A program made the position numbers and the translations under genes. A stretch of 64,000 nucleotides of DNA from Ascidiella aspersa (taxonomy: Eukaryota): the NCBI GenBank assembly GCA_963924565.1, contig OZ004610.1, positions 31,620,001 through 31,684,000 on the forward strand, in the 5' to 3' direction. Shown here piece after piece: positions 2,460-55,300 of the stretch (its first letter is position 1; the number at the start of each line of letters is the position of its first letter). The notes under the pieces were generated by a model. It made no database searches and was not told the DNA's origin. It was given only the letters and a program-made list of their open reading frames with translations.

Positions 2460-2680
2460 AGATAATTGCTAAGGCAAAAAGGTTGAGTAAATAGGCATCA
2501 TTTTGATTAGGACGTTTCGATACGAACTTGTATCATCTTCACTCTTCAGTTAATGTGACAGAGAAGTCTCAAAAACTTAAGATGGTACAAGCTCGTATAG
2601 AAGATGTCGATTTACTCGAAATTTTCGGCTTTGCAAATCATTTTCAAGCTACATTACAGATCCGTGCATAGTGACCCAAG
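2460..2680. mobile_element. Family A palindromic hammerhead-bearing repeat (other copies ~20030-20155, 37740-37785, 40262-40580, 45255-45385, 51300-51400)
   Basis: Shared sequence gatacaagttcgtatcgaaacgtcttaatcaagatgatgtcgatctactcgacctttttggctttgcaattcattatcaagctacattacag, in both orientations. Confidence 0.8.
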
Positions 2681-11355: not shown

Positions 11356-14300
11356 TTAGCAAATCATTGTCAAGCGTTGTTCTAATGTCCAGCCGGCGTA
11401 CGCCGCATGTCGCACGCGCCCAGCGAAACACGCCCTTCCATATTGACGGTCGCCCCTTTGTAGCAATGGAAGGAAGGCGTCCAAGCCGGGAAATATGCTT
11501 GAACACATGCGCTTCGTCGTTCCAGTTGGCCATGGTTGGCATTGCTATATATGCTGCGGACATTTAAGCAGCGTGCTGTTCAGCTCCTGGCCGAGAATAC
11601 TGCTCGATTAACTAGAAAGAATTTGACGGTAAATCCGCCTTTGATAGTAAAGCTGTGTAAATGTCCAAACATCCCATATAGCGTTTCCTCGTTTTAACGA
11701 GTGCATTTCTCGTTTCAACAGCAAAAGTAGGTCATAGTTTATAAACATATGATGTTTTTTTAATTGTTTTTAGGTTTAAGTACTTAACTGTAAGAGATAT
11801 CGGACGGACTTGGCAAACTCGTACGAATGTGGTAACAGTTCTGATTGGTCAAGCATAGGCGCCAAACTTGGGTCTGCAAAGCGTTTTTTTACGCCCTGGT
11901 TTCTTGCACGGGGTTAAAATTCGCCAAAATTTGACCAAGTAACACCGGTATAGTCCAAAAAAATCCGCCCTCGCTCCATCTGCACGTATTCTGTGACGGA
12001 TAATAAGTTACCAAACACTGCTTAAAGTAAATTGATACTAACCTTCGTCTTTTTAATGCAGGGCCAATCACGCATTAGCTTCGAGTACAATTTATTCTGT
12101 CAAAATTACAAGACGACGCTTTGCTTTAAAAACGATAAACGAAATCGCAAAATCGGTTTGCAAGACCTGCTACGTTTTGTTGGTAATAAGCACTGAATCA
12201 AAAAAGCGCCATGGGATTTTGAAAGTTCGGCGACTATGTGGTCAAGTATAACATGCCAATCGAATCAGTTAAAACATGTTATTCGATTAAATTAGCGTTG
12301 TGTGTTTTTTTTAAAGGCTACTGCGGATGCGCGTCCGCTTTCAAACTCACGCTTCATGTTATGTGTCGTGTTATCGCATTACGTCGTTGCAACGTTTCAC
12401 GGGATGCGATGGACATTAGCGTCATGTTCGATCTGTGTTGTTCAGCGCACGCCAGCTGGTCAATGTTTTCGTCGTCGGGAAGTTGTCGAAAATGTCGGCA
12501 AACTTTCACGCCTTTATTCAAGTTGGCCGTATTTACACAACGCTAGCCTGTGTGGGCGGTTATCGGTGCCATCGTGAAAATCAGAAAAAGGCATCGAACA
12601 CTGGTTTGCATCTCGTGTAGGCTGTGCATCTGAGCAGGCTAAAATGTTTTGAATGCATTTTAAGCGTCTGAATTGCATTTTTGCCCACAGCTTCTCTGTA
12701 GAGCCATAATATAACAGTAAAGAGCTTAGTGGCTCATAATTTTTGCTTTTTATGAGGATGTTTCAAGTTTTAAGCATTGGTTTTAATATGGCGATGCGCC
12801 TTTAAGTTTGTTATCGCGTGTTATAAAGGTCGGTTTACATTCACTTTAAAGGCAACCGTAAAATTTTCTCCTACATTTTTTTGGAGCTTAATGGTTTGAG
12901 GTTGTAGTAAGACGTAGGAAGTATGTCAAAGCTCATACGGAAATAGGTAGCATTTTTAACGTTTGGAATATCTCCTTATTCATGTTTAGCATCATGATGT
13001 AGATTTTCTCCCACACTGTTTTCATGAAATTTGGGCGAAAAACAGATCATATTGTAAAGCGACAAAAACGTGAAAATTGCTCAAAATTTAATAAGGTATA
13101 GTTATGGCGATATTATAAAATTGCTTAAAAAAGAAATGTACCGCGCTTTCAAATCGGGTATGGACGAAAAGCGCCGGTTGAGATTTAAGAGACATGCTTT
13201 TCGCTGTTTCGGCAGCGGAACCTCGCGACCGTAAGTTCACAAATGCGACCTAGATTCGCCGAGCCAGGGGGAGGGGGGGAGTTAAAGAGGGGAAGGGGGA
13301 CCTCGGTGGCCCACTTCGAGGCCCGCCGGGTTCATTCGCGTTCGGTCGCGTTCCACGTTCGTGACTCACTAGGAAAGGCCGAGTAATCCAACGACCGTCG
13401 CTTTTCGCTTGTTGACGATCCGCGCGGAATTAGAGCGAGTCTGCCGGGCGCTTTGGATAGTTTCGAAGATCTTTTTCGTTTCTTCTGCCCGCGCTCAATG
13501 CTGACTGCTTTCGAACCTCAAGCGATTTTTGCTCTGGTTATTTGGACCACACAGTTTTGAATATTTTCCTTGCAAAATCACCGTTTTTATAACCCATTTA
13601 GTAAGAATATCAAAGCCCATACAGAAGTAGATATTATTTTAAACGTTTAGAACTCTTTATTCATTTTCAACATAGTCTATGTTGGAAAAGTTAAAAAATG
13701 CTACCTACTTCTGTATGGGCTTTGGTGTTCTTTTTACGTCTTACAACAACCTCCAACCATTATGCTCCAAAATACCCCCTTTAATTTAAACCTGTGTGAC
13801 CACGCAAGTTTGAAAAACGTCCATAGATATAAACAAATCTGTTTCTACCCGAGAACCTTACTGCATTCCATAATTTGTGGGAGCAAAAGATTCGCAACAA
13901 ACTTGGTGAAATCCTACTCCAAAATTGGACGATATATCCACCAAAACGGTCATTTTTCATTACAAATTTACCAGGCCCAGAATTTTTGCGTCAAACAGGC
14001 TTGGTTTTGGAAAGCTTTTCACGCCAAAGATCTTTGGCGCAAAGGTACCGGAAAACAATCGGGCCCAACAACCATCTATCCATTGACGGATTGACGAAAG
14101 CATTTTAACGTGAATTTAATACATTCACACTTTCGTCCATTCGTTTCGCAAAGATCACGCGAGAAAGTTGAAAACGCGGCCCGGCTCCCCTCTTGCCCCA
14201 CCACGCCGCCTGTCTTCGCCACGTGGAACTTAAGCCGCAAGTTGTCAGACAACCCGAGCGAGCGTCTCGCATTTGGAGCGGCCATTTTCGCTTGTATTCC

Positions 14301-16329
14301 AAAGACTTGCGCTCAGCGCTGCTCTTTGTCCCTGGTTTCGAATATCTCACCACTTACGCGTCGCTCAAAGCGCTATAGTGAAGTGCCGCCAGTGATTACA
14401 GCGCCCAGAAACCAGCCACCTGGCAGGTTTTCAGTGACCAGTAGAGATCAGCGCAAGGTCACCACCACCGGATGCTAAAAAAATTGACGTCACGGCGCGT
14501 CACCGCCGCCTTTTAAGTGTAACGATAACCAGTGGACAGTCACCGCTAGATCGACTATCGCTTTGAAGGAAAGCTGGCGAAACTTGACGACGCATGTGGA
14601 CTTTGTGACGCATTCGAGATAATTCGCGTTTGTATTTGTATGATATATGACCTTCATACCCGAGGCTTAGAAAGCCGAAATTTTCCAGATGCCCAACATA
14701 TAGGAAGCAAATGTACAAAACTTTAGATAAATATCCAATTTTAGAATGAAAAATGCCCAATGAAAAGCACTTCATTTTAACCAAAGTCATTGTCCAAAAA
14801 ACAAGTCCAGTCATGTGTCCAAAAGAATTAAGTCAAGTCATTTGTCCGAAAGAATTGAGTCAAGTCATCTGAAAACAGTGACTTAGCACTTAAGTCAATG
14901 TATTTATATATGACCGTCACTCGAGGCTTGGGACAGCCGAAATTTTCCAGCTACATCGCTTTTATAGCTTTTTTTCTCTCGGTTAAGGTAGGAGATCCAA
15001 GTCGTGCACAGCGCGTATGTCGTCGCGTGTTTCGTTTACGCAAATTCAATTAAGCCTCCCATCCGTATGGCGCGCACAGTCCGAACGTTATTTCCCTGAT
15101 TGGCTGATTGCGTTACCGAATTGCGAGAAAAGCGAATTATCCCCGTGCTACGCGCATGCGAGTGAGTGTATGCGGCAAGATTACATACTTATTCCGGAAA
15201 AGCGCCGGCCTACATTTAATCTGCCATTCGTTTTTTTATACTTCTTGGCAACTTTGTGTGAATTCTTTAAACGGTAAAGCGTTCGTTGTAACTAGGTGGG
15301 TCGTACGCTATTCTCTCTTTAATGTTTTATCCCAAACGTAAATACTTTAGAAACAATGACAAACTGAATGTGTAAAATATGAAAATATCTCCTTGCCCTT
15401 GAACGTAAATGACGACAATGACTTCAAAGCAAATATATTGATATCCTAGTCACTAGTAAGTTCTAGTCATCCAAAAAAAAAATATATATATTTCTCTTTT
15501 GAATAACTAGAACTTATTAATGGCTGACTTTGACCAGGACAGGAAAGTCTAAAGAATATTTACTAAAAAACCACCGTGTTTTTTTTTGTGTGAATAAACT
15601 GGACAAAAAAGGGTCCGCCTGCATTTGAACCGGTCATACGAGCGTACCAGTGGCACAACGGTCCAGTGCCCTTCCGTCGCTCTTTTGTCGTCGTTGGTAA
15701 GTCAGGCGAGTTCAAGCGATGTCGGCCAGCGGATGTATTCCCAACACAGCTCGTCCAGAGGCCGGCTTACACGGGCACTCAAATGGCACACAGCGGGCGG
15801 TTTTAACACAGAAAGGCGAAAATCAGGGTTAAATAAATATCGAGGTAGCAGGAGTATCTAAGCCCATACAGAAGTAGGTATTATTTTTGTTTCGAATAAA
15901 TCTTCATTCATTTTAAACATCTGCAAAATAAATTCTTAAATTTTAAAGAATTTTAGACTGTTTTGTAAAGTAAGGTATAAAGCTTACATCTGATGTTGAA
16001 AATGGACAAAGAGTTATTCGAAACATTTAAAATGCTACCTATACTATATGGGCTTAGATATTCCTACTACATCTTACTCCAAACTTCAACCATTATGCTC
16101 CAAAATATTGGTGTTTTTTAATTGTAAAAACTGCCGGGTTATTTATTATTAGGTTCAAATTCTCGGGTAAAAATAAATCCTGGCGCACTTCAGTAACGCT
16201 CGATGTGAACTGGCCTTCACAATAAAAAAATGTGTAGTTATAAGTTGTTTTAAAATGTAAAACCCGCCAGGTGATGGAAATTTAATGTTTGGCTAAAACT
16301 TTCGGTTCAAACAGTATCTGGCCTCTTGT

Positions 16330-20030: not shown

Positions 20031-20072
20031 ATTAACTGAAGATGATACAAGTTCGTATCGAAACGTCTTAAT
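20031..20072 (+). ncRNA. Minimal type I hammerhead ribozyme motif, family A (intact core)
   Basis: ATTAA-CTGAAGA-T-GATAC(aagttc)GTATC-GAAA-CG-TC|TTAAT: stem I, stem II, palindromic ACGT stem III, GUC cleavage triplet. Confidence 0.85.
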
Positions 20073-23000
20073 CAACATAATGTCGATCTACTCGACCTTT
20101 TTGGCTTTGCAATTCATTATCAAGCTACATTACAGTTCCGTGCATAGTGTACCCAATTCCATGTTAGCCTGACAAAATATGTTTTGTACTAATTGATCTG
20201 TTAAGTTCGCCTTGTATAGTGTCTACAGGCCACAGGTTTAATGCGTTTAAAAAAAAGCCGTTATCGCGGTTGGGACAGAACTTTGTAATTGACTTGTTGT
20301 TTTTGTTGCCTGGATTCTGCAAATCCAAATGGACGTGGCTTGTGTTACACGACCGCCGTTCTCTGTAACTGACCGACCAATTTCGCCTAATACGCGCGTC
20401 TTAACGTTTCCTGTACCTATAGTGCAGCGGCATGCCATTTTGTTGTTATAGCCCATATTGTTGTCTAGCTTTTGATTTGTGCAGGCGAATGGTGATGAAA
20501 CTTGACTCTAGCAAGTTAAATGTATCTGTCTAAAAAACAAATATATACTTTGGTACATAATGGTTGGAGGTTGTAGTAAGTTGTAATAAGAATATCAAAG
20601 CTCATACAGAAGTAGATATCATTTTGATCGTTTTGAATAACTCTTTATTCATTTTCAATATAGTTCATTTTAATCGAAAAATGATACCCACTTCTGTATG
20701 GGATTAATATTTTTAATAATTCAGCCGGATTTGAAAGTTGTGGACAGCAAATTAATTGTCAGGCATCCTTATGTAGTGCGGGCGACCCTCCAGTTTTTAC
20801 TTAAACTTAACTATTAGTTAAAAAAAAACTACGATCGAAACATTTACCACCGTAGTCTGTTTGTTGTCAGTTTTAAAGGCAGGAATTGTTTTTTCGTGGG
20901 CAATACTCAGCGAAGCCCATCTGTTTCCTTAAAGGCTAATGTTGGGTGCTGTGCCCATCTGCAAGTTTCCCGCTTATTGCGCTATTAACTATGACTCAAA
21001 ATGACCAGATGCTTTCGGCGAACGGCGATGCTTAATAGCTAGCCTGTTGCATCTAAGTATTGCTTTCGCCATTGTAACGTTTGCCACCTACATTAGCGAC
21101 ACTTTTGTTGCGTTTTTGCGTTTTTGCGAATAAAAATCTTCGAACTATCAATTATTTATTGCAAAACACAGTCATAGACCCTGTTGCACCGATAAAGTTA
21201 GAAGTTTTCCACATTTTAGCGTTTGTCAGCTGCTGCTTACTGATACAATTTTGTTGCGTTTTTGTGCTGTTTGGTTTTCGGAAACGCCTAATAGTATGAA
21301 AATCTTGGAAATATCATCTATTAATTATTCTTATTACAAAACACCGGTTTTTACACGCTTTTTTCTCCAAAAAAAATTAAGGTTACCTGGATCTATCGAA
21401 CTGGATTCCTTCGAATCCTGGGGTTTTATAAAATCGGTTCCATAAGCTTATTTCTTGTTGTTAGAAAACAACTTGTAAATATGGATGTAGATCGTCAGGC
21501 AACCCTAATAAGTTTAATTTCGTTTGCTCCACTGGTCTGGGTTTTTGCGTAATGCGTTTTGCAACTTAAACAAGCTCGTAGTGTTCCTATACTGAAAACA
21601 AGTTCTTCTGGTTATTTGTTTTTCCGACGTTTTGGTTAACTATCCAGGAAGCCATCATCAGGGAATGTAACAAAACTAACAACACCACGCAAAGTAAAAC
21701 GACACAAAAAAGGGTGATAAAAATGCGCTCATCTCTTGTGGTGTTCGGCGAGCGAAAACGTTTGGGACGTATAGGGTTACTAAATTGATGTGTCAACTGT
21801 TAAGCACTACGGATTGATGGTTTGTCTTAACAACCCTATTTTGTCACGTTCGCAAATCGCCCAACGCAATATCGCAATCGCAAAAAAAAGAAGAAAACTC
21901 ACGCTGGCCATCAATCGTAGCGCAGTCCACATTTGTCACCGCTCATCAATCAGCAGCTTGCCGCTCATGCAGCTTGTCAGGCCGCGATCGCCCAGTCATA
22001 CACGCCGCACGCGTCGTAATGCCGGCTCACGCGTTCAAATGACTCACGACCACCCCTACGATATTGCTGCGATACGCACCGAACCGCTATGCCGCTTTAC
22101 GTGTGTCGCGTTGACGCTTGCACGCACGATTTCGACGCCTGTTGTTTGCCAACGAATGCGGGTCAAACGGGTTTGGCCTCGGAACCATGCACGCGGTTTT
22201 CGTGGTCGACAACCCCCGTGTCCTGTAGCGAAACATCTCCTGCATGAAAGCCATGGTGTAATGTATCTCCTCCTTGTGCTGAATAAGTGGTTCCCAACCT
22301 GGGGATCGCGAGGTGTCAAGAGGGTCGCTATACTATTTATTGAACGAAAAAATAACAAGAAACAAAACAATTCAAACAAATTAGCAGTGTAATGAGTAAA
22401 TGAAAGCGCCAGTTTAACAATTATTTTAACGGCATTTGCTTTGGTGAACCAGTCGTGTTTTTGAGTCACCTTTAAACCTTTTTTCAATCGATGGAAGAAT
22501 TTTGAAAACTGGCAAGGGGTTCGCGACAACAAAATGGTTGGAAACCACTCTGCTAAATCTTCTTTTTACAGCATTCAGTAATCAATTAATGTCCCCTTCA
22601 TTTCTTTGCCTTAATATCGTCGACGGTCTGCAGAGTTTGTCGTTTTCCGAGCATTCCTTTTCTTTTCTGCTGCTTCTCGATAACTTTAGCGTTTGCGGCG
22701 TAACTGATCTCCCCCCTCCTCTAAAATCCCGCGTCCGCAGTTTGCGGATGACCGCCGAAAAAACGCGCGCGTTTTGAGTTCGACCGTTGACCGCCCGTTC
22801 ACTGCCTGCCATCAATCAACCATCGGTGCAAAACCGCCGATGGTCGGTGATATAACGGCAGCGGTTTAACGCAAATTTCGCCCAAACGCAACGCTGACGT
22901 TTTTTATGTTTGACTGCATTTTTTATTATTAAAGCTGTGTTACATTCGTGCATCGTGCATAGCGTTGTTAATGCTGAAAAAAAAATCAAACTTATAACAA

Positions 23001-29458: not shown

Positions 29459-32400
29459 CTCATCTAAAGTCCGACAGCGAACCTGATTGGCCCAGGGCCC
29501 AGTGACCTTGGAATCATACGACCTTGGTCGCTCGTTTATCTTAGAACAGCATGTGTGTCAACGTCCTCCGAGATAAACCGCGGTTGTAAGATACAAGGAA
29601 ATGTCGAGTTATACCGAACCTTGTGGTTTAAAATGTCGTTCAAGTGCAGACAGAGGTTTGTAGCACGACAGGCAAGGCTTTATAAGGCAATGGTTATTAA
29701 ACTATGATCCTCCATGAACTAGTTTTAGGGGGTCCATGAAGACCTACTTGAGATATTAAGGTATATTTGAGAAACTAATCATTTTTTTAAAGAAAAGAGT
29801 GTAATTAAAAAACTGTCAATGAATGTGAATTTAGACACATTTTTTAGACCAGAAATGTCAGATATCTGAAGTCGATTTGTATTGTGACATCAATTCATGC
29901 CGTCATCTCTAAAATTCCCTGCCTACCCTGGCCCACGCAAAGCAAAAATATTGTTTAGGGGCCACCACGTTAAAAAAGTTTCAAGAACCCCTGCTTTAAG
30001 GGGATTCACGGTACGACCGCGCTACGCTTTCGCCTAACTTCGTGATATGACTGGCTGCTATATTGAACGCGCCTTGTCGTGGCAATGCGTTAGCACCAAC
30101 AGCATAAGCGTTAGTATAAGCATCGCCATTTGCGCTAGCGGTCGTGGGCGATTAGCCGGCCTATCAAAAAGAAAGAAGCGCATCGTTGGAAATGGGAAAT
30201 AACAGAGCGCTTCCGTTACTTTGCCAGCACTCGCGCGAACGTTGGGTGGCTGGATGGCCTTACGCGTTACGCTCAGCATTCGTCCGCGTGATTCTCGCTG
30301 GCGTTGGTTCCGCGCAAGGGTGACGACGCTGCCGCTATGCCCCGTGCCTCGTTCGTTATGTAATTTGTGGGCGTAATGGCCCCGGTTCTTGCCCGGTGCA
30401 TCATTTGATGTTTATCTTCAGCGATTATGAAAGGCAAGGACTACATTTCGTGCGTAAGGCAAGGGCTATATATCTAATTCAAGTCATTTAATATTCAACT
30501 AACGATAAAGTCAAGTCATTTGTAAAGTAAACAATGAGGCATAATGGTTGGAGGTTGTAGTAAGACGCAATAAGAATATCAAAGGCCATACAGAAGTAGG
30601 TAGCATTCTGAACGTTTCGAATAAACTCTTTAAAATGAATGAAGTAAACTTGTCCAATTCTTTGGCGCGCGTAAGGAAAGCGACAGTTTAATGCATGGCC
30701 CTATAAGCGTAAGTTTTATTTCGAGGGTTAATCGTCGCCAACGCGCTTCGCACTAAATCAGCTAAAAACTGACCATTAGGTTCAACTAACGAAGGTACGA
30801 ATCGACCGAGAACACAGGATCTTGCGCGCCTGTGCTTTGGGACAAATGGCGACTCTCGACTCGCCATTGAATAGCTGACAATGGCCGCTCGCCTGGCTGG
30901 CAGATTAGCGCAGGGCTGCATCGCGGATCGGGAGACAATAGCCGTGGCTGTTGGCCGGCTCCAGGGCCCCAGGCGGCGCGGGTATTTCGCTGGCAATCTG
31001 TTAATGTATTTGATGGTGAGCCCGGGACGGAAAAAAATGCACGTGAACGATTTGGTGCCGAGCCGATGTCATTATCAGGTCGTCACCGCAAACGTGCACT
31101 TGGTTTTGTTCGTTTGCGAGGTCGAGTGCTGCGCTCAAGGGCGCCTGAAGTTCTGTTAAGGGCGCTCTGGGTTGTTTGCGAATGGTAGCGACGAATTTAA
31201 GTGAATTAAAATCAACGTTATGTTATGTGGAGTCAACTAACTACGCACGGCTCGTTCCTGCTGCGGCAAAAACAAGGTGCTTCAGGACTTTGAAAGGGAG
31301 TTAAGAGCGTAGGGTTTGAGTTTTAGTTTCGGTCAAGTTAATATGCAAATGCAGCACCAGGCGTGCGATGTGGGTGGGCTTGTAAGCAGAATAATACTTG
31401 GCAATTCGTATTGATAACATTCTGTATTAGTAGTAGGACGTATTGGTAGTAGCAAAAGCGTTATATTTATTCGTTGGGCTGTTTAGTTTATTCAAGAGAG
31501 TCCGCCAAAATTAACCCATCGTTGCATAAGTTTAGAAAAACCCCAATCAGTCCCCGAAAGCGAAACAGTGTGAAAGAAATCAGCTGTAATTCGTTTTTAT
31601 AACATTCTGTATCAGTAGGACGCGCATCAGTGCAAAAGCGTTATATAATCTCCGGTGGGTTGTTTAGGTAAAACATCAGGGCATAAGTTAAAATGCGCAG
31701 TCAATGCCCGAAAGCGAAACAGGATAAAATAAATCAGTTATTAGCAGTAGGACGCATATTTGTGCTCCGGTGGGTTGTCCAGAAAACCCACCGGAAGTTA
31801 AAATGCCCAAAGTCATTGCCCGAAAGCGAAACAGGATTGAAAGAAAAATCACTCGCTATTCCCTTACAATGCATTGAGGTCGGGCGAGTCAGTGTCAGTT
31901 CGGCAGTCACGTTCCTGGTTAAGCAATATACAGGCACAGGAAGCGCAGGCGTGCCGGGGTCCTAACAGCAGCGCGAGGTACTTTAAAACCAAACGCAGAA
32001 AGAAGAAGAAAGGCCCGGGCGAGCAAACGATCACGAAGTACGTCGCAATCATGACGCCATGCAGTACGTTTGAGATGCGCCCGTTGGTCGTTAATGACAC
32101 ACACTGCTGGTGTTACTGGTGCTTGTGCTACAATACGCATATGATGACTGGCTTGCAGGGCGAGCGCCGGTCAGATTTATTTTTCTGTCGAGCTGCCCAC
32201 ACGCGAACGGCCTGCTGGTCGTGCCAAGAAAGCGTTTTCTGTCCCCGACTCACTAAGCTAACTGTCGTGGTCGTGACACCAAGTAGTTAGCGCCGAGGTC
32301 GCTTGGTTAGCGAGAAAGTGTTTGGTGTAGTTGGTTAGCAGGCGAGCAAGTGAGAGGGTCGGTAGAACTACTTCGTTTTTCTTTTAACCATTTGTCGAGT

Positions 32401-34318: not shown

Positions 34319-37300
34319 GTGGGATTCGGATTATCCGTTCAATATAGGCCTTATGAAATCAACATACAGGCGTCTTTAACCTTCCCGGTAAAATCAACTT
34401 AGGTTTTTAGGTTTGTCGTTTGTGCAAAATTGATACAGGTGTCGCTGTGTGCAAATGTTATATTATTTGTCACTCTTGGTTTCGGTGCTGGATCAATCCC
34501 AAATGAACCCTTCAGAGTGAAACAATGATTCGCCAACCTAATGACAGGTGACTGTATACTTTGTACAATTAGAACCGACAAAAACCGGACAAAAAACAGG
34601 GTCCGCCAACGTTTAAAGCAAGCTTATGTAGCACTCAAAGTTGTTTTGCGTTGGTCACAGGCGCTCACACGAGCCAGTGAGCAAAACACAAACGAAAGCG
34701 TCAAACACCTTGCTGCGTCTGTGACCGCCTTTGCGTTAAGTGTGCCAGCAAAACATAAACACAGGAGCGTATCGCGGCCAAACAACATCAGTTACCGCTG
34801 CTGTTCGTGACGCTGCCTTTAAAGCGAGATGCTTGATCGATGGTCGGTCAGCGGCGTGCATCATCTCTCGCCAGAGTCGCGTTCGAACCCCCCGATACAC
34901 AGCAAAACGCTTGGTCACGTTGCGCCCGCCAAGTCTGTGACGTCGATCGGTGACGTCAGCAAAACCGTCGGGGCTCGAATTGACTCGGGTGCTCGGTTGT
35001 TGTTGAAAGGCCGTTGATACGCTGTATTATGGTTGCAATTATTACACTTATGTACGCGTCTTTTTTCTCTTTTAATGTAGGAATAAATGCGAAGCTCTTA
35101 AATACGCGGTGTATTAACTTTTGACACTCGCAATCGATTAATTACCACTTTTGAATATAGAGCTGAACTCGAACCTCTTAAAAACGCTTTTTATTCAATT
35201 TTGACACTAACAAACGAGGTATTATGCCTTTTGAAATTGGAGCGAAGCGAAGAGCTCTTCAATTTACGCTGTGTATAACTTCTTACACCTAAAAACGCGT
35301 TAGTGTGCCTTCGTTTAAAACCATAGCGACATTTCGGTATGTTGTCCTTTGTTTTGGCCGACATCGACGCTTTACAGCGATCAAACCACAAGAAGCGACC
35401 CTGGTCGACCCGAAATTGCGCACCCTTGACGTAACGGCACGACGCGATATAGTAGCGATGATAATTAATTAAACATCGCTCCTGTCATCGCGCTGGTGAC
35501 TATACACACGCACTTGCTCTTTAATAAAAATATTTTCAATTAAAAAAAATCGTAAAATTAAAAAATGACTGTTTTTTCCGTTTTTCAAACAAAAAACTAT
35601 TTGCGCGAAAATTTGTGTGTTTTAAGTAGGTACAGTAAATCGACTATAAATATGCCGTTGCTACCAGGCATAGTATAATGAAAATAAGTTCTTATGGTAT
35701 ATTTGTTAAACCAACGTTTCGGCTAACTATTTTTTGATGAAGGCTTTCCGAATAGTAAGCGGAAACGTTGGTTTAACAATATATGCCAAAATAACTTATT
35801 TTTGTTATTAAATAAACTAGCATTGTCAAAAAAACCGGACCCGTGTCACAAGACCTGCTCTTTGAAAAAAAGATTTTAAATTAAAAAAGATTAAAAATTA
35901 AAAAATGACTTTTGTGAAAATTACTTTCAAACTTTTTCGCCAAAATTTGCTAGTTCCAAGTTTAGTAAAACAACTATGTTTTGCAAGCAAGCAAGCACAC
36001 CGGTTGTGTTTTCTGGCTGATATAGCGTTGTTCACTATATTCAGCATTGTAATCACCGGACTGTTATCATAAGATTTCAACCACGTCGGCGTTTTTGTCG
36101 ATTCGCGACTTCCCATTTTACCGCTTCCCCTCCGCCCGTTGGACGCGGCCTTCGCTCCTTTGTCACGTTCGCGCGTGTGTGCGTGCGTGTGCTCGCGTGA
36201 TTCCACGACGCGCGCTTCCGATGTCACAACGCCTCGTGTGACGTCATATCCGGGCCTGTTTTCGCAACGCTTGTGCCGACCTTTCCTTCGCCGCCTACGC
36301 CGCATCGGTCATCAGAAAACCCGCAGCGCTCACAAACGCGGTAAAATGAATTTATACCGAAATATAATGCAAAGTCGTACCAAGAATATCAAAGCCCATA
36401 CAGAAGTAGGAAACATTTTGAACGTTTTATTCGAAACGTTTGCTTTGATATTCTTATTACGTCTTACTACAACCTCCAACCATTATGCTCACAAGATTTG
36501 CATTGGTCATCAGAAAACCGCAGCGCTCACAGCATAATGCAAAGTCGTAAGGAGAATATCAAAGCCCATACAGATGTTGAACGTTTCGAATAATTCTTTA
36601 TTGAAAATCGTCGTTTTTACATCGAAAACCCAACGCGGTAAAATAGACACCGAAATAAAAAAAAAAAAATGATGATATTGCAATCATTTTGAACGTTTCG
36701 AATAACTCTTTATTTATTTTCAACATTAGGAGAAAACACTGATACTGTATACCTGCCTCAGCAGTGTATACTATAAAGAATCAGTGCCTTCTCATGATGT
36801 TGAAAATGAATAAAGAGTTATTCGAAACGTTCAAAATGATATACTTCTGTATGGGCTTATTACGTCTTACTACCAACCATTATGCTCCCTAACACAAGGT
36901 ATAAATCAAGAAACAGCTTCTCGATTCGGCGTCATTTACCCTGACGAAGGCGACTTGAATAGGTTGTCAAAACGTTGGTTAAGAAGTACAATTTCCAGAG
37001 AAGGAGCTGTTGTTTGATTTATATTACTATGCCTGGTAGCAACAGTTTATATATAGCGCGTAGGTTGGCGGTTTGATGAGCGCAAAACTTCCCATACTTT
37101 CCTATTAATAAAATGCATACCGATTTATTATTATCATAAAGAGTTTTTTTACCACCCCATTTTTTGTGTGCAAAATTTCCCATCCCTCAGTCAAAAAAGT
37201 CTATTTTCGCTTCCAATGCAATCACGCTATGTCATATCAACAAAAACGACAACAGGCTAAGTCACTTTCCAGCCGGAATTGTCCAAAGTCGGTCATGGTG

Positions 37301-46300: not shown

Positions 46301-49300
46301 TGCCATTCTTCGACAGCATTTCAATCAAAGGTAAGCCCCCCCCCCCCTCCAAACAAACACACACTTACACAATCTCATCTACAATTCTACACACTCACAC
46401 TTACACTTACATACACACACTCAAACACACGCACCCTAACTCTCACACACACTTACACAATCACATATACAATTCTACACACACACACTTACACAATCAC
46501 ATCTACAATTCTACACACACACACTTACACAATCACATCTACAATTCTACACACACACACTTACACAATCACATCTACAATTCTACACACACACACTAAC
46601 ACTTGCACAAATACTTAAACTTAAACTCACACTTACATCTACACACTCATACTCGCACTCACACATAATCACACTCACGCTCAAAATTACACTCAAAATC
46701 ACCATCACACTCATACTAACACTCATACACACTTATACAAGTACTCACACTTACATCTACACTTACACACACACTCACCACTCAAACTCACACTCACACT
46801 CACAATCAAAACACACACTTACCACTAACACTCAAAACACACACTTACCACTCACACTCAAAACACACACTTACCACTCACACTCAAAACACACACAATA
46901 GCTCTTTAATTTATTCATTTGTTCGCTTGTATACGTTTGCGTTTACTTCAAGTTGTAGCAGTAGCGGCGTTAATTGCACGATTCGGGAAAATGTCGAATT
47001 CCAATTGCTTCCTGATCGACGAAGAACTTGAACCTGTACTTGGGCGAAAGTGAAAGCTATTTTTCCCCTTGTTGACGCTGCTATAGGAGCCAATTGGCTT
47101 TACAGCGATGCTTTGCTGGGAAGTTGTACTGTTAACAACCCGAATAGTGTCGACGATTGACGCTTTTCAGTCGACCGATTTGGGAAACAAAATATCAAGC
47201 TGTTTGTGGAATTGACCGAAATATTGGAACGGCGCATTTTAAAAATCTTTGTAAACACAAGCTTTTAAACCTACAAAACAGTATAGACTTTCTTGTCTCA
47301 GTCAAAATCAGTCACTATAGGTTCTAGTTTAGAAAAGAGAAATATATTTCGTCAATCACGGCATCATCAGTCTCTTATTGAAATAGAACTTTCAAACCTA
47401 TAGCTAAAATGTCGAAACAACGAAATGCAATCTTTGTCGAAATTTAAAGATTCTCAATAGATTTAAAGCGGCTGCACACTATAAAAACGGGCTTGCTGTT
47501 GTTATGTTAAAGTCTTGAACTTTTTTTCCCGCGACCCTCTAACAAATTAAGTTTCTCCCTAAGGGGTACATGGACCACAGTTTAAGAACCCCTTTGGCAA
47601 ACAGTTAAAAAAACAATGGCAATCTTGTGTAATCTATACAAGTATACGTTTTTCAGATCACACCACTCTGCTGAGCACAACGTGGGCCGAGATAATCCTC
47701 CTGGCCGCTCTTTGCGTCCATGAGGAACAACTCTTCGGAGATCTTGCCGACATCACGGCCAAGTACATTCCGGACAGCGAGGAACTATCGAGGTGAGCAC
47801 AAATTCTTTTTCGCCGCTGTTTAAAGCCAAACTTTTTACGATTACCAAAGGTGGCATTCGCGTGGTAAAATTGTAAAATTGTTCTTCCAGCAAAATTTTA
47901 TTATAAAATTGTTATGTCGGCAAAATTTCTTTAAAGTACCAACGTTTCGACCACCTATTCGCAATTATATTGCCCTGAAGAAGATTGCCAGAATAGGTGA
48001 TAAAAAAAATATAATTGAAATAAAAAAAATAAAAAAAATAAAATTGAAATAAAAAAAATAAAAAAAATTATAATTGAAACAATGCCTGCAACAGTATTCA
48101 TTGCGTGATAAAGTTCTATGGTATTTTGCGGAGTGTCGATCGTCCCGTTGTTTTTTAAGAGAAATAGGTTCTTCGCCATTTAATTAGGGTTGGTGATAGA
48201 CTTGTGTGGCGCAGAGAACGGTTTCTATCTATGAAACATTTAAGCTATTACATTTAAGGAGCATAATGGTTGTAGTAAGACGTAATAAGAATATCAAAGC
48301 CCATACAAACATAGGTATCACTTATATATATACAGTAATAATCAGTGCCTTCTCACTATGTTAAAACGAATGCAGATTTATTCGAAACGTTCAAATTGCT
48401 ACTTACTTCTGTATGGGCTTTGATATTCTTATATAAATTAAATTTCGTTGAAAAGTGCGCGAGGTTGTAGTACGTTGCTATTTTGTCACGGCACGCTTTG
48501 TAGAAAAAAGATATATCCAAAATATCGTGCAAGGCCATCTCTGCCTGTAGTTTATTTTACCGTAATCTCCAAATGCCATATCATATTAGCAATACACCTG
48601 ATTAAAAATAACCGCTTTGACGTGATTGGAGGTCCCGTGACCGGAAACCGTTTCTGTGACGTATCACACCGGTCGTGACGTAACTGTTTGTGACACGGGC
48701 GCTTTGAGACGGCCTTAGCGTTAGCACGCGCACCAAGATCACATAAGGCAGTGACCTCTGTAGGTTGAAGGTCGGCAAAGGCTCAAACCCGAGTCACCCG
48801 CGCTTGAAATCAAGTGTCAGGCGTTTGCCCTTCTGATTTGGCGAATGTGTACAATTGCCTGTTTAATCGTCACTGACCAGACGCGTATACCACAACACAC
48901 TGCTGCTGGCAGTTGACGCTATAAAGTTCAACCGTCGGTCAGCTGCCATTAAGTTATATATTTGTCGCCAATACTCGATGATTGTCGTTTTGGTTGCGTG
49001 TTAAACCCTCTTTGAGCACATTTTATTGCAAATTGAAGCTACGCAGGTGATCTGAAAAATAACCGAATATCTTGAATTGATTTTGAATGTAAGTTTAAGC
49101 TCAAATCTAACGTAGGTGGAATTGCACTTTGACGTAAAAATATCAAAGCACCCTTTGATACTGGAAAGCATATGGAAATTTTTGTGATAGATTCTAAGTA
49201 TTTCTAATAATTCTTTATTTGTTTTGCAACATATTGTCGAAAGCGTTTAACGAAATTAGAAACGGACGTATTATTTTTTTAGCAATCAATTTATCTCGCT

Positions 49301-52300: not shown

Positions 52301-55300
52301 TCCTATACCGTTCCGGTCGTCCAATACACACACACAAACTTACGCACTTGCGCACGCGATACACACACCGCTTTGTTGTTTTTGCACCTTGGTTTTCTGT
52401 TTTCGGGCGAAAACTTCCGCGAGATTGGAAAAAGCAGTTTTCCGTTAAAACCAACGAAGCAACAAACTGCTGTAAAACGACTAACATTCGTAGATTCGGA
52501 AAGTTGCAGGTTCCTAGCGTTAAAAACTTGCATGACCATATAGTTAGTCGATTGTATGATCCCACCTTAAAACATGAATCACGTTTATCGCGCATACCCT
52601 AACCAGTGTTTCTTAACCTTTTATGGCCTACGGCACCCCTTAAAAGTTGTAAATAGTTTTTCAATACCCCGACTGGAATTTTCGTAGAGTATTTTACTGA
52701 AATGCCACTATAAATGGAACTAGAACGACACAATTAACTTAAAACATGCAGGAACATGTCATTTGATATAATGGCCTCTAATCGTACACAAATAGTTGTA
52801 TCAAGAAGCTTACCAATTCAGCAAATATCAGATTCCTAATTTTTTTTTTAAATCCCCATCGGCATCCTTGAGCATTAGAAACGGCACCGCGGTTGAGAAC
52901 CACTGCTCTAAACGGTTTACTAACCTTTTGTACAGTTTTAAAGCTCGTTTTTGGCCACGGCCAGTACCCATACCCCTTCCTATTTTTAAGGCCATTTTTC
53001 AATCTATACCCGCGTTTTGCGTCAACCGTCACCGAAAGCGCCATACGATGGTCGCGGAATTTTTCGCCACTCTAATGTACAACTGGTCGCCAATTCCCAG
53101 AAAATAAGGCCCTTCATCGGAGTATGTGTTTACGAAATGACGCAATGCTTCGAAGCATAATGGTTGGAATTGTAGTAAGAATATCAAAGCCCATATAGAA
53201 GTTGGTAGCATTTTGAACGTTTCTAATAATTCTATTAATTTTCAACTTCAGATGTACTACTTCTGTATGGGCTTTGATGTTCTTACTACGTCCTACTCTG
53301 TATTTTAGAAGTGATTGGACGTGTGTGCGAAATTACCAGTTTTAAAAAATGTTTTGTGATTTTAAATTTTACCCGACTTATTAATCCACCACTTACACGG
53401 CCGACAGGTATTTTTCTACTCGAAATAGTCGCCCGATAAACGTGCACAAAAGCCAATCAATCGCTGGTCTTCTGCCATTTCGCGCAAATACGAGCGAAAT
53501 GAAATACGCCAGGACCTTGTCTCGGCGGGCACATAACGAGGCACGCTCTGCAATTCCTAATCAGGGCACGACCACGACTTTCAAGCTCCATTTAAGAAAC
53601 GGCGACGGCTCGAAATCGTTGGCACTGTGTTAGGTTTGACGAGCTAGACGTCTAGCCGCATGCAAGTGCTCAAATACCGACGGCCATTAAGGCGTTGCGA
53701 TCAAGTTGGCTTAACCCCTGTTGTACGGCAATTTCTGACCTGACGTGCGATACGAACGCCAACTTTTGAAAAGTCGTACTGCGCTCGTGTTCTGAGTCGC
53801 CTGGGCACTTTTGCGTTGTCATGTCGGACTGATTTCGTGATGATCATAGTCACGTCCACACAATATAACAATTTTATCGCGTCTCGCTGGGAAATGCTTG
53901 TCTGCGACCTATTAAAGGTCTGGGTCAATCAATTAAAGATACACACGCATATATGTGTTAAACAACTGTGATGTAGCCCTTCTGAAGTTGCTTTTTGACC
54001 AATGATTAAGGCTTTCGTATCAATAGTACACTGAAAGCCATCGCAGAATCACTGAATCTGTCGATCTTGCTTGCATCATTGATTGACAGATTCGGTGAGT
54101 CTGCGATGACTTTCGGTGTACTAATAATGATACGTAAGCCGTAAAAAAACAGCTTCAGAAGGGCTCGATCACAGTTGTTAAAAACATATGCGTGTGTATC
54201 TTTAATTGATTGACCCAGACAAATAACGGGTCGCAGACATGGCGCGATGGACGGCTATTTACTAGATTGTGTGGACGTGACTGTGATCTGCACGAAATTA
54301 GTCCGGTGTACTCGTCTGGGTCAACTATATTTCTCCCCAACCGACCCAATTAGAATCAGCACATTTAAAGCTGCTTTTGCCTTTAGGGATCGAATCTCAA
54401 TCAGTCGCCAAATCTAAAAACCAAGCTCCGACGTTTTAAATTCCGTGCTCAGCTATCGTGGCGAATTGTAATTGCGGAAAGGTCGAAAGGACATCAATAT
54501 AGTATTATGTTTATAAACCCTTGGCAAACGGCAAGACGGGTGGCAAACGGCGGTTCCAAGAGCAAACTGCAGTTTATTGCGAATCGTTCGTGCCGATCAT
54601 AACTGGCCTTTCGTGTCAACAAGCACGCTACCAACAAAAAACAGAACAATAGGAGTGACGTCACATCATTTCTGCGAAGTTCTACCAAACGTGTCTCGGC
54701 GTCCGAGTCGGCCAAAATGTCAGCAAAATAAGCCGTAGTAGGTTGCAAGTTCACTTGAAAAATTCGGCCAAATTGTCATAGCCTATACTCCATGACGCAC
54801 GGGTCTTGTCCAACCTTTAATTACGTCTATCGCTTACGGTTTAATTTTGCTTGGAATTATCAACGCCATATGCCTTTTGTTTGCCGACCAACGTTACTAT
54901 TACGTCACGCCTTTGCGCCACTTGAATTAACCGCAAGGAGGCGCTATTACGTGAAGCGGTAAAGCAAATAATCATGCCCAAGTCCGTATTGCCTTTGTCA
55001 ATAATGCAAAACCCAATATAATTTGGAGCAAAATGGTTGGAGTTTGTAGTAAGACGTATAGTAAGAATATCAAAGCCCATACAGAAACAGGTAGCATTTT
55101 GAACGTTTCGAATAACTCTTTATTTATTTTCAACACCCAATATACTTATTATACCCAACATACTTTATAGTTATGTTTAAGTTGTTGCAACCCCGGAAAA
55201 ACACCAAGACTGGACCGCGCGGGGTTTTCAATCTTTCCCACAGAAAATAAACACCATTTGTTCGCATCCAACTTTAGCTTGCGCGCCCCAAGCGCGTTAT

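What the first reader, a model, noticed from the sequence alone, without database searches (positions are those of the whole stretch)
36792..36839. Most abundant repeat carries a U3:A8 compensatory hammerhead core (UUGAAAA)
Seen: family B (>=11 copies) has TTGAAAA-T-GAATAA(agag)TTATTC-GAAACGTT in exactly the layout of the canonical families. TTGAAAA is retained in copies at 15996 and 36800 and, on the - strand, near 13665, 20655, 36720 and 55130. Established: C3 and G8 form a Watson-Crick pair in the active hammerhead core, and U3:A8 swaps retain activity. Inference: a fixed double change at both pairing partners points to selection for catalysis in the master element, and CUGANGA-based searches would miss this variant. 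Stem I is weak (TG/CA, a 2x2 loop, then TCAT/ATGA).
Basis: partly seen in the sequence, partly recalled or inferred. Interest (0 to 1): 0.8.

Follow-up and report, generated by a model that had tools for sequence, protein, structure and literature searches.

The report
Penelope retrotransposon hammerhead with U3:A8 core
The repeat is the end piece of an abundant Penelope-like retrotransposon; it carries that group's usual minimal hammerhead ribozyme motif with a paired U3:A8 swap in the core, a variant already described in 2014, so it is real but not new.

Summary
The motif at 36800-36831 is exactly as described, and it is not a chance match. The window holds 12 insertion loci of the family. 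The genome holds about 1,600 motifs with this core.

It is not a DNA MITE. Copies have a fixed 3' end, clustered or truncated 5' ends, target-site duplications of variable length (8-17 bp), and often an inverted partial copy joined head-to-head. Longer copies continue upstream into a reverse-transcriptase plus GIY-YIG ORF. The 116-nt unit encodes the first 38 codons of intact 843-aa ORFs that lie in 2.67-kb tandem arrays. So this is the pLTR/ORF-start module of a Penelope-like element (PLE).

The motif has every hallmark of PLE minimal hammerheads except that C3:G8 is replaced by U3:A8. No copy with this helix II has C3:G8. No amplified family in the genome has an unpaired 3-8. This favours constraint on the pair.

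Catalysis is untested. RNA-seq shows no ends at the predicted cut. Both changes are silent for the ORF.

Cervera & De la Pena (2014) already reported U3-A8 PLE hammerheads. The copy at 36800 is a dead copy locked in a -96 kcal/mol foldback. The scan's own notes list what looks like the same family (from the title alone) on another piece of this genome (s1-787249).

The parts
36772..36890 (+). Right (direct) arm: a 5'-truncated copy of the PLE 3'-terminal module. It holds the end of the 3'UTR, the hammerhead/ORF start, the first ~38 codons and the AC-rich 3' end ...CCATTATGCTCC. The tail carries internal deletions, so the copy is dead.
   Evidence: query 211-337 of the long natural copy, 81% identity; the frame from 36806 reads MNKELFETFKMIYFCMGLLRLTTNHYAP*
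36792..36799 (+). Helix I, 5' strand (UCAUGAUG). It contains two in-frame upstream ATGs, at 36794-36796 and 36797-36799.
36800..36806 (+). Core box UUGAAAA = U3 U4 G5 A6 A7 A8 A9. U3 is at 36800 and A8 at 36805; these replace C3 and G8.
36806..36808 (+). A9, the unpaired U and G10.1 together form an in-frame AUG. It stands 26 nt from its A to U17.
   Evidence: the same layout is reported for PAc (PMC11167929)
36808..36823 (+). Helix II: GAAUAA / UUAUUC, 6 bp with G10.1-C11.1, capped by the loop AGAG.
36824..36831 (+). G12 A13 A14 A15.1 C15.2 G16.2 U16.1 U17. ACGU is a palindrome with no loop 3, so helix III can form only between two copies. The predicted cut is between 36831 and 36832.
   Evidence: the feature is as defined in PMC4209133
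36832..36840 (+). Helix I, 3' strand (CAAAAUGAU).
36683..36751 (-). Left arm: an inverted partial copy joined head-to-head. The same motif lies on the minus strand at 36692-36723. A transcript across both arms would lock the motif in a long hairpin.
   Evidence: arms 69 nt, 90% complementary, 20 nt apart; -96.5 kcal/mol, z -16.5
36372..36490 (.). Neighbouring truncated foldback of the same family: 36372-36427 on the minus strand and 36442-36490 on the plus strand.
36542..36602 (-). Neighbouring partial copy of the same family.
55022..55135 (-). Simple 114-nt insertion of the family, flanked by the 10-bp target-site duplication TATATTGGGT.
20548..20718 (-). Full unit (20548-20663, minus strand) with a short inverted partial copy (20678-20718).
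12880..12992 (-). Older, diverged full unit with a decayed core (CTAAACA) and a 9-bp TSD.
13599..13771 (.). Foldback copy.
15852..16104 (.). Foldback copy with a ~70-nt spacer.
48257..48432 (.). Foldback copy, long form.
53147..53297 (.). Foldback copy.
30539..30622 (-). 5'-truncated copy, 95% identical to the long natural copy, with an 8-bp TSD.

Best explanation
Family B is the terminal module (pseudo-LTR plus ORF start) of a young, very abundant Penelope-like retrotransposon (PLE). The full unit is about 2.67 kb. It has one ORF of about 843 aa (reverse transcriptase plus C-terminal GIY-YIG endonuclease) followed by about 144 nt of UTR, and it lies in head-to-tail tandems. The hammerhead-like motif sits where the UTR meets the next ORF start. 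A9, the unpaired U and G10.1 form an in-frame AUG, and the following 38 codons run to the fixed 3' end GCTCC, which lies in an AC-rich stretch.

New copies are made by target-primed reverse transcription that starts at that 3' site. This is shown by the fixed 3' end, the variable TSDs and the 5' truncation. Most insertions are either about 111-115-nt 'solo' units that begin at the ATG, or units with an inverted partial copy joined head-to-head. I infer that the solo units come from an RNA 5' end near the ATG, or from initiation at the 5'-proximal site, and that the inverted copies come from a template jump at the RNA 5' end.

The motif is a PLE-type minimal hammerhead. It has no helix III loop, so it could cleave only as a dimer. 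In it the C3:G8 core pair has been replaced by U3:A8, which keeps the Watson-Crick pairing. Whether it still cleaves is inferred as plausible, probably weakly or with protein help as in other PLE hammerheads, but it is not shown. The copy at 36800 itself is a dead, internally deleted copy locked in a foldback.
For: Retroelement rather than MITE:
- Exact TSDs of 8-17 bp, mostly 10-13 bp, flank insertions in more than 20 loci.
- The 3' end is fixed and the 5' ends vary.

PLE parent:
- L017 and L026 continue upstream into a decayed ORF with the RT motif FYVDDIF and with GVIYKVQCLCGATYIGQT. The latter hits Pfam GIY-YIG at E 3.7e-4, 21.2 bits against a cutoff of 22.6.
- The genome holds 150 or more matches to that ORF, with open frames of 816-843 aa. 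Three lie in tandem at a 2,671-bp period on C9.
- Distant database relatives carry RVT_1 and GIY-YIG.

The unit is the ORF start:
- The unit's 38-aa translation lies in 843-aa open frames at C3:10336881 and C4:6272133.
- Each lies 1,575 nt upstream of an RT-thumb match that has the same 843-aa frame.

Hammerhead layout:
- U4 G5 A6 A9 are present, as are the unpaired nucleotide after A9, G10.1-C11.1, a 6-bp helix II, G12 A13 A14 A15.1, the palindromic C15.2-G16.2, U16.1 and H17 (U, or C in a subfamily).
- The 32-nt spacing is the same as in the canonical families of this genome: CTGAAGA-T-GATAC..GTATC-GAAACGTC and CTGATGA-T-GGCA..TGCC-GAAACGTT.

Census with one pattern:
- C3/G8: 3,132 matches in 8 or more families whose helix II covaries.
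- U3/A8: 1,592 matches, almost all family B.
- C3/A8: 273 matches; U3/G8: 122 matches. These are only scattered decayed copies of the other families.
- With family B's helix II there are 0 C3/G8 copies and 8 C3/A8 copies.

Expression: depth over the unit is about 220 and 365 in the two directions of an RNA run, and zero in the flanks.

Literature:
- PMC4209133 gives the min-HHR features, the U3-A8 covariant in a S. mansoni PLE with about 1,300 hits, and dual motifs on opposite strands.
- PMC8557442 describes 5' truncation, partial tandems and an inverted 5'-truncated copy.
- PMC11167929 shows the ORF starting in the HHR and internal RT initiation in an AC-rich stem-loop.
Against: - No cleavage evidence. 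The RNA run shows no place where molecules begin or end at the predicted cut, L013 1537/1538. The power is low: 6% of a standard RNA-seq run was read, and the same blank is reported for an active PLE hammerhead.
- The proximal helix I is only 2 bp, followed by a 2x2 loop.
- The 116-nt unit has no significant fold of its own (z +0.58).
- Both core changes are translationally silent: CUG to UUG (Leu) and AAG to AAA (Lys), or they lie in the 5'UTR if A9-U-G is the start. Coding constraint therefore allows exactly these two sites to drift.
- The Pfam GIY-YIG hit is just under the curated cutoff, and RVT_1 was only a weak partial hit.
The ORF-start claim therefore rests on coordinates and open-frame sizes.
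- Rfam hammerhead models do not score the motif, but they miss the canonical minimal ones too.
Confidence: 0.82

Rival explanations
1. Relic motif. The element descends from a PLE with a canonical hammerhead, but the ribozyme is no longer used. The sequence is kept by other constraints: the start codon and first codons of the ORF, and the RNA segment that the reverse transcriptase recognises. C3U and G8A are simply two silent transitions that happened to fix.
For: - Both changes are synonymous in the verified reading frame, or lie just 5' of the A9-U-G start.
- In PAc, hammerhead-dead mutants insert normally in vitro, and Naiad PLEs thrive without hammerheads.
- No RNA ends are seen at the cut site.
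- Helix I is weak.
Against: - Other silent core sites (G5, A14, G16.2, C1.1) have not drifted in the master.
- The six helix II pairs are perfectly complementary although coding does not require it.
- Across 9 or more amplified families in this genome, none has an unpaired 3-8.
- Under coding-only drift, the chance that the two changed sites out of roughly six silent core sites are the pairing partners is about 1 in 15. That figure is my estimate.
Confidence: 0.3
2. Cut-and-paste DNA MITE or foldback transposon whose inverted arms only resemble a hammerhead by chance.
For: Many copies are near-perfect inverted repeats of 60-130 nt per arm. The hairpin draws sub-threshold matches to MITE-derived plant miRNA precursor models.
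Against: - TSD length varies from 8 to 17 bp.
- One arm is always complete to a fixed 3' end, while the other is cut at variable points. Many insertions have no inverted arm at all.
- The sequence is collinear with the 3' end and ORF start of an RT/GIY-YIG element.
- The backwards-read control pattern gives 0-16 matches against 1,592.
Confidence: 0.02
3. Independent non-autonomous 'retrozyme'-type element that circularises through hammerhead cleavage and ligation and borrows PLE machinery, rather than being truncated or solo pieces of the PLE itself.
For: - The 111-115-nt units have clustered 5' ends, so they behave as a discrete class.
- One tandem of two short units was seen (L029).
- A 2026 preprint links animal retrozymes to PLE pLTRs.
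Against: - The unit termini are not at the predicted cleavage site; they lie 36 nt upstream and 79 nt downstream of it.
- The units are 97-100% identical in translation to the ORF start of intact PLE copies.
- Tandem arrays of short units are rare in the sample.
- The RNA run showed no back-join at the cleavage site.
Confidence: 0.08

Closest known systems
Minimal hammerheads (min-HHR) of Penelope-like elements, including the U3-A8 covariant of the S. mansoni Cercyon PLE (Cervera & De la Pena 2014, PMC4209133)
   Same: - No loop 3, and a palindromic 15.2-16.2.
[quoted passage not shown]
- A G10.1-C11.1 pair, a long helix II (6 bp) and a short helix I.
- Location in the PLE pLTR, thousands of dispersed copies, and pairs on opposite strands.
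- The same U3-A8 replacement of C3-G8.
   Different: - A different host genome and a different PLE family: the nearest database proteins are only 35-48% identical.
- Here the U3:A8 family is the single largest hammerhead family of the genome.
- It is nearly uniform, with 811 identical 28-mers, whereas the schistosome set was described as highly heterogeneous.
PAc (Poseidon of Anolis carolinensis) pLTR-ORF junction hammerhead (Frangieh et al. 2024, PMC11167929)
   Same: - The hammerhead overlaps the ORF start, with the start codon at the beginning of helix II and the cut site 26 nt on.
- Tandem organisation.
- The 3' end of insertions lies in an AC-rich stretch within the first codons of the ORF.
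- No RNA-seq ends at the cut site.
   Different: - PAc has C3:G8, with both positions upstream of the start codon.
- Family B has two further in-frame upstream AUGs.
- Protein-dependent cleavage and internal RT initiation were shown in vitro for PAc; here they are only inferred.
Canonical min-HHR families of the same genome (for example window 20036 CTGAAGA-T-GATAC..GTATC-GAAACGTC and 56659 CTGATGA-T-GGCA..TGCC-GAAACGTT)
   Same: - The identical 32-nt layout and the same AUG made by A9-U-G10.1.
- The same foldback and solo insertion styles.
   Different: - Their core has C3:G8.
- Helix II and the tails are unrelated in sequence.
- In the copies read, the frame after A9-U-G closes quickly.
Animal non-LTR retrozymes and the Sm-alpha type I hammerhead repeats
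   Same: Short, non-coding-sized hammerhead-bearing retro-repeats linked to PLEs.
   Different: - Those have a helix III loop, form tandem arrays with unit ends at the cleavage site, and give circular RNAs.
- Family B units end elsewhere and are pieces of the coding element itself.

Membership tests
Hammerhead ribozyme (core definition) | Conserved core C3 U4 G5 A6 N7 G8 A9 ... G12 A13 A14, the A15.1-U16.1 pair, and H17 | tested here: not met
   Eleven of the 13 core letters are met. C3 and G8 are U and A in essentially all copies. The 3-8 Watson-Crick pair that those letters form is kept.
Hammerhead ribozyme (core definition) | Self-cleavage 3' of H17 | not testable with these tools
   The only indirect check was RNA reads, which show no pile-up of ends at the site. 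This has low power.
Hammerhead ribozyme (Rfam models) | A score against the Rfam hammerhead covariance models | tested here: not met
   There was no hammerhead hit at the gathering score in the whole window, nor at E<=10 on 36650-36900. The canonical minimal motif at 20036 also fails, so the models do not cover this class.
PLE minimal hammerhead (Cervera & De la Pena 2014) | No loop 3, with palindromic 15.2-16.2, so that helix III forms only in a dimer | tested here: met
   GAA-ACGU-U with no intervening loop; AACGUU is self-complementary.
PLE minimal hammerhead (Cervera & De la Pena 2014) | An unpaired nucleotide between A9 and G10.1, and a G10.1-C11.1 pair | tested here: met
   The U at 36807, and G 36808 paired with C 36823.
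PLE minimal hammerhead (Cervera & De la Pena 2014) | A long helix II (6-8 bp) and a short helix I | tested here: met
   Helix II is 6 bp. Helix I is 2 bp, a 2x2 loop, then 4 bp.
PLE minimal hammerhead (Cervera & De la Pena 2014) | Location in the pLTR of an element encoding RT plus GIY-YIG | tested here: met
   Caveat: the GIY-YIG Pfam score is just below the cutoff, and the intact copy was not read letter by letter.
PLE minimal hammerhead, U3-A8 covariant | U3 and A8 together, as the state of the family rather than of single decayed copies | tested here: met
   1,592 U3/A8 motifs were found. With this helix II there are 0 C3/G8 and 8 C3/A8 copies.
Penelope-like element insertion signature | 5' truncation, partial tandems, an adjacent inverted 5'-truncated copy, and variable TSDs | tested here: met
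   (2,671-bp tandems).
DNA MITE / foldback transposon | Fixed-length TSD and symmetrical terminal inverted repeats matching a transposase element | tested here: not met
   TSDs are 8-17 bp, the arms are asymmetrical, and many copies have no inverted arm.
Retrozyme (circular RNA, hammerhead-delimited unit) | Unit boundaries at the cleavage site, with tandem repeats | tested here: not met
   The boundaries lie at the ATG (36 nt upstream of the cut) and at GCTCC (79 nt downstream).

The most novel reading that the evidence does not exclude
The U3:A8 hammerhead is still catalytically competent (as a dimer or with the element's protein). The 116-nt unit (hammerhead, start codon, 38 codons and the AC-rich initiation site) is by itself a sufficient template for PLE reverse transcription. 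Thousands of 'solo' units would then arise by initiation at the 5'-proximal site of the element's own mRNA. That would make this family a natural definition of the minimal PLE template, and a natural experiment on the 3-8 core pair in a currently active element.
Probability: 0.3. Interest if true: 0.5.

Novelty: new member of a known kind. Interest (0 to 1): 0.3.

Why it matters
It explains the commonest short repeat of this window, and one of the commonest of the genome, as pieces of one active Penelope-like retrotransposon.

It shows that hammerhead searches keyed on CUGANGA miss about a third of the minimal hammerheads here: 1,592 of 4,724 paired-core motifs.

It adds a second, very uniform natural case of the U3:A8 core pair. 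Because this case lies over the start codon of intact ORFs, it is a convenient substrate for testing whether PLE hammerheads need the 3-8 pair and what they do.

It does not open a new class. The variant, its dimer logic and the insertion architecture are all published.

Tried and rejected
- Rfam at gathering score on the whole window, and at E<=10 on two sub-regions. There were no hammerhead hits even for the canonical minimal motifs. The only hits were sub-threshold plant miRNA-precursor models drawn by the long hairpin, which I treat as artefacts.
- Random sampling of 200 kb of the genome. It gave only 3 elements, too few for statistics. Full-length copies, the upstream pLTR and the clade-diagnostic N-terminal motifs (DKG/DKT) could therefore not be read.
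- RNA reads. No ends appeared at the predicted cut, no informative strand bias, and 96% of reads ran into unrelated flanks, which indicates read-through of many loci. This neither supports nor refutes cleavage.
- Folding. The 116-nt unit has no significant structure. The dimer predictions are dominated by helix II swapping, not by a clean helix III, and are not decisive.
- Inner ends of the inverted arms. I looked for enrichment at the cleavage site, which would have indicated cleaved RNA used as template. Only 1-2 of about 15 arms end there, so no signal.
- Protein search for close relatives in other species, to read their hammerhead state. The nearest hits were only 35-48% identical, so no sister-species comparison was possible.
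- The DNA-MITE reading was rejected (see rival explanations).
- A literature search for U3/A8 kinetics found no open-access measurements. The open literature found confirms only that C3-G8 is a Watson-Crick pair and that C3G/G8C partly rescues activity.
Full report
**Observation.**

The sequence at window 36800-36831 is TTGAAAA-T-GAATAA-AGAG-TTATTC-GAAAC-GTT, as stated. The 32-mer, allowing up to 3 mismatches, occurs at 15996+, 20627-, 36692-, 36800+ and 55102-; shuffles give none. A long natural copy finds 12 insertion loci of the family in the 64 kb, seven of them as inverted pairs.

An RNA spanning both arms would fold into a hairpin of -96.5 kcal/mol (z -16.5), which buries the motif.

**What the repeat is.**

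The window belongs to a 308.6-Mb eukaryotic assembly. Thirty genomic copies with flanks show a unit of about 116 nt. It begins at (TG)ATG-TTGAAAA and always ends at ...CCAACCATTATGCTCC followed by a few A's.

- Exact direct repeats of 8-17 bp, mostly 10-13 bp, flank the insertions in more than 20 loci. One is the window copy 55022-55135, flanked by TATATTGGGT.
- Simple insertions cluster at 109-115 nt. Other copies extend further 5' for variable distances.
- Many copies carry, on the 5' side, an inverted partial copy that starts at the same 5' end and stops at a variable point.

A fixed 3' end, variable 5' ends and variable TSDs are the signature of target-primed reverse transcription, not of a cut-and-paste MITE.

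**The parent element.**

In two loci (L017, L026) the long form runs upstream, after about 144 nt, into a decayed ORF. That ORF carries the RT motif FYVDDIF and the sequence GVIYKVQCLCGATYIGQT, which hits Pfam GIY-YIG at E 3.7e-4, just under the cutoff. A search of the genome with that ORF piece finds 150 matches with open frames of up to 816-843 aa. Three of them are spaced 2,671 bp apart on contig 9.

The 38-aa translation of the 116-nt unit lies inside 843-aa open frames at C3:10336881 and C4:6272133. Each lies 1,575 nt upstream of an RT match that has the same 843-aa frame. The arithmetic is consistent: 843 codons plus a stop plus 144 nt gives about 2,676 nt, against the 2,671-bp period.

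The unit is therefore the beginning of the ORF of a Penelope-like element (PLE). In tandem copies it follows the previous copy's 3'UTR. The published PLE architecture matches this: 5' truncation, partial tandems that form pLTRs, and an inverted 5'-truncated copy at the 5' end (PMC8557442). The window itself contains no PLE ORF.

**The motif.**

The motif has every feature that Cervera & De la Pena (2014) list for PLE minimal hammerheads:

- no loop 3;
- palindromic 15.2-16.2 (ACGU);
- an unpaired nucleotide between A9 and G10.1;
- a G10.1-C11.1 pair;
- a long helix II (6 bp);
- a short helix I.

A9-U-G10.1 is an in-frame AUG, and U17 lies 26 nt from its A. This is the arrangement reported for the Anolis Poseidon element PAc, whose ORF begins at helix II (PMC11167929). 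Canonical minimal hammerheads of this genome use the same 32-nt layout, for example CTGAAGA-T-GATAC..GTATC-GAAACGTC at window 20036 and CTGATGA-T-GGCA..TGCC-GAAACGTT at 56659. Family B differs from them in the core only at positions 3 and 8.

Rfam's hammerhead models detect neither family B nor the canonical minimal motifs. Their silence is therefore uninformative.

**Is the double change meaningful?**

I ran a census of the whole genome with one pattern: core, N, G, 8-22 nt, then CGAAACGTH.

| Positions 3 / 8 | Matches | Control | Composition |
|---|---|---|---|
| C3 / G8 | 3,132 | 3 | at least eight families whose helix II covaries |
| U3 / A8 | 1,592 | 16 | almost all family B |
| C3 / A8 | 273 | 9 | scattered decayed members of the above families |
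| U3 / G8 | 122 | 9 | scattered decayed members of the above families |

Among about 1,660 copies with family B's own helix II, none is C3/G8 and only eight are C3/A8. So the double change is fixed in the family, predates its amplification, and no amplified family has an unpaired 3-8. Silent core sites other than 3 and 8 are unchanged, and helix II is perfectly complementary although coding does not demand it. This favours constraint on the RNA fold.

Several points cut the other way:

- Both changes are silent for the ORF (CUG to UUG, AAG to AAA), or they lie just 5' of the A9-U-G start.
- Only one U3:A8 family exists in this genome, so there is no replicate.
- Catalysis is untested.

**Expression.**

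In an RNA-seq run of the same organism the unit is covered at about 220 and 365 reads in the two directions, while its unique flanks have none. 96% of the reads run on into other flanks, so the signal is read-through of many loci. No position shows an excess of molecule starts or ends, including the predicted cut.

The same negative result is published for PAc, whose hammerhead cleaves only with its protein and is dispensable for insertion in vitro. The blank therefore has little weight. Contigs of two other organisms also hold the family.

**Mechanism proposed.**

Shown:
- the element spreads by reverse transcription from a fixed 3' site inside its own first codons;
- the hammerhead-like motif overlaps the start codon.

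Inferred:
- the 111-115-nt units reflect a discrete RNA 5' end at the ATG, or initiation at the 5'-proximal site of the mRNA, in line with the internal initiation shown for PAc;
- the head-to-head copies arise by a template jump at that 5' end;
- the motif acts, if at all, as a dimeric hammerhead with U3:A8 in place of C3:G8.

**Comparison and novelty.**

The U3-A8 covariant of PLE minimal hammerheads was described in 2014 for a Schistosoma mansoni PLE, with about 1,300 genomic hits, together with the remark that the standard descriptor missed it. This is therefore a new member of a known kind. What is specific here:

- it is the largest and most uniform hammerhead family of the genome;
- intact ORFs are present;
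- it overlaps the start codon.

From its title, the scan's own note s1-787249 appears to list the same family on another piece of this genome.

**Verdict.**

Interest is low to moderate.

Noticed in passing
G000 contig 9, 23488240-23494196 (outside the window; coordinates): Three head-to-tail copies of the parent Penelope-like element at a 2,671-bp period, each with an 816-aa open frame. A similar tandem lies at C4:6271042/6273708. This suggests recent activity.
   Followed up: partly
window 20036-20067 (+) and 2515-2549 (-): Canonical minimal hammerheads of another family (CTGAAGA-T-GATAC..GTATC-GAAACGTC). The copy at 2549 has an internal duplication of the core box (CTGAAGAGTGAAGATG).
   Followed up: partly
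window 56600-56740: A foldback of a third family (CTGATGA-T-GGCA..TGCC-GAAACGTT). Its inverted left arm starts inside helix II, which is the same head-to-head insertion style as family B.
   Followed up: partly
window 36302-36330 and 36504-36531: A direct repeat of about 28 nt (GGTCATCAGAAAACC(C)GCAGCGCTCACA) brackets the first truncated foldback. Nearby AACGCGGTAAAAT... segments also repeat at 36336 and 36640. The 36300-36900 cluster looks like a local duplication of an insertion together with its flanks, not three independent insertions.
   Followed up: no
window 36682-36841 (-): The foldback hairpin gives sub-threshold matches to MITE-derived plant miRNA precursor models (MIR6217 at 56 bits against a gathering score of 110). 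I take this as an artefact of any long perfect hairpin. Such hairpins could still feed small-RNA pathways.
   Followed up: no
L013:2290-2600 and 417-830 (genome C7, near 29.707-29.709 Mb): Other repeat families in the flanks of a family B copy are also highly covered in the DNA and RNA runs. L013 2600 (-) holds a canonical CTGATGA-G-GTCAGC.. hammerhead.
   Followed up: no
genome-wide: A sizeable minority of family B copies have GUC instead of GUU at the cleavage triplet, and both arms of a foldback share the state. Both triplets are permitted for hammerheads, but the change turns Phe into Ser in the ORF.
   Followed up: no
genome-wide: Many C3/A8 single mutants are CTGACAA, derived from CTGACGA families. 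This is consistent with CpG decay at G8, a mutational route that could also have started the family B change.
   Followed up: no
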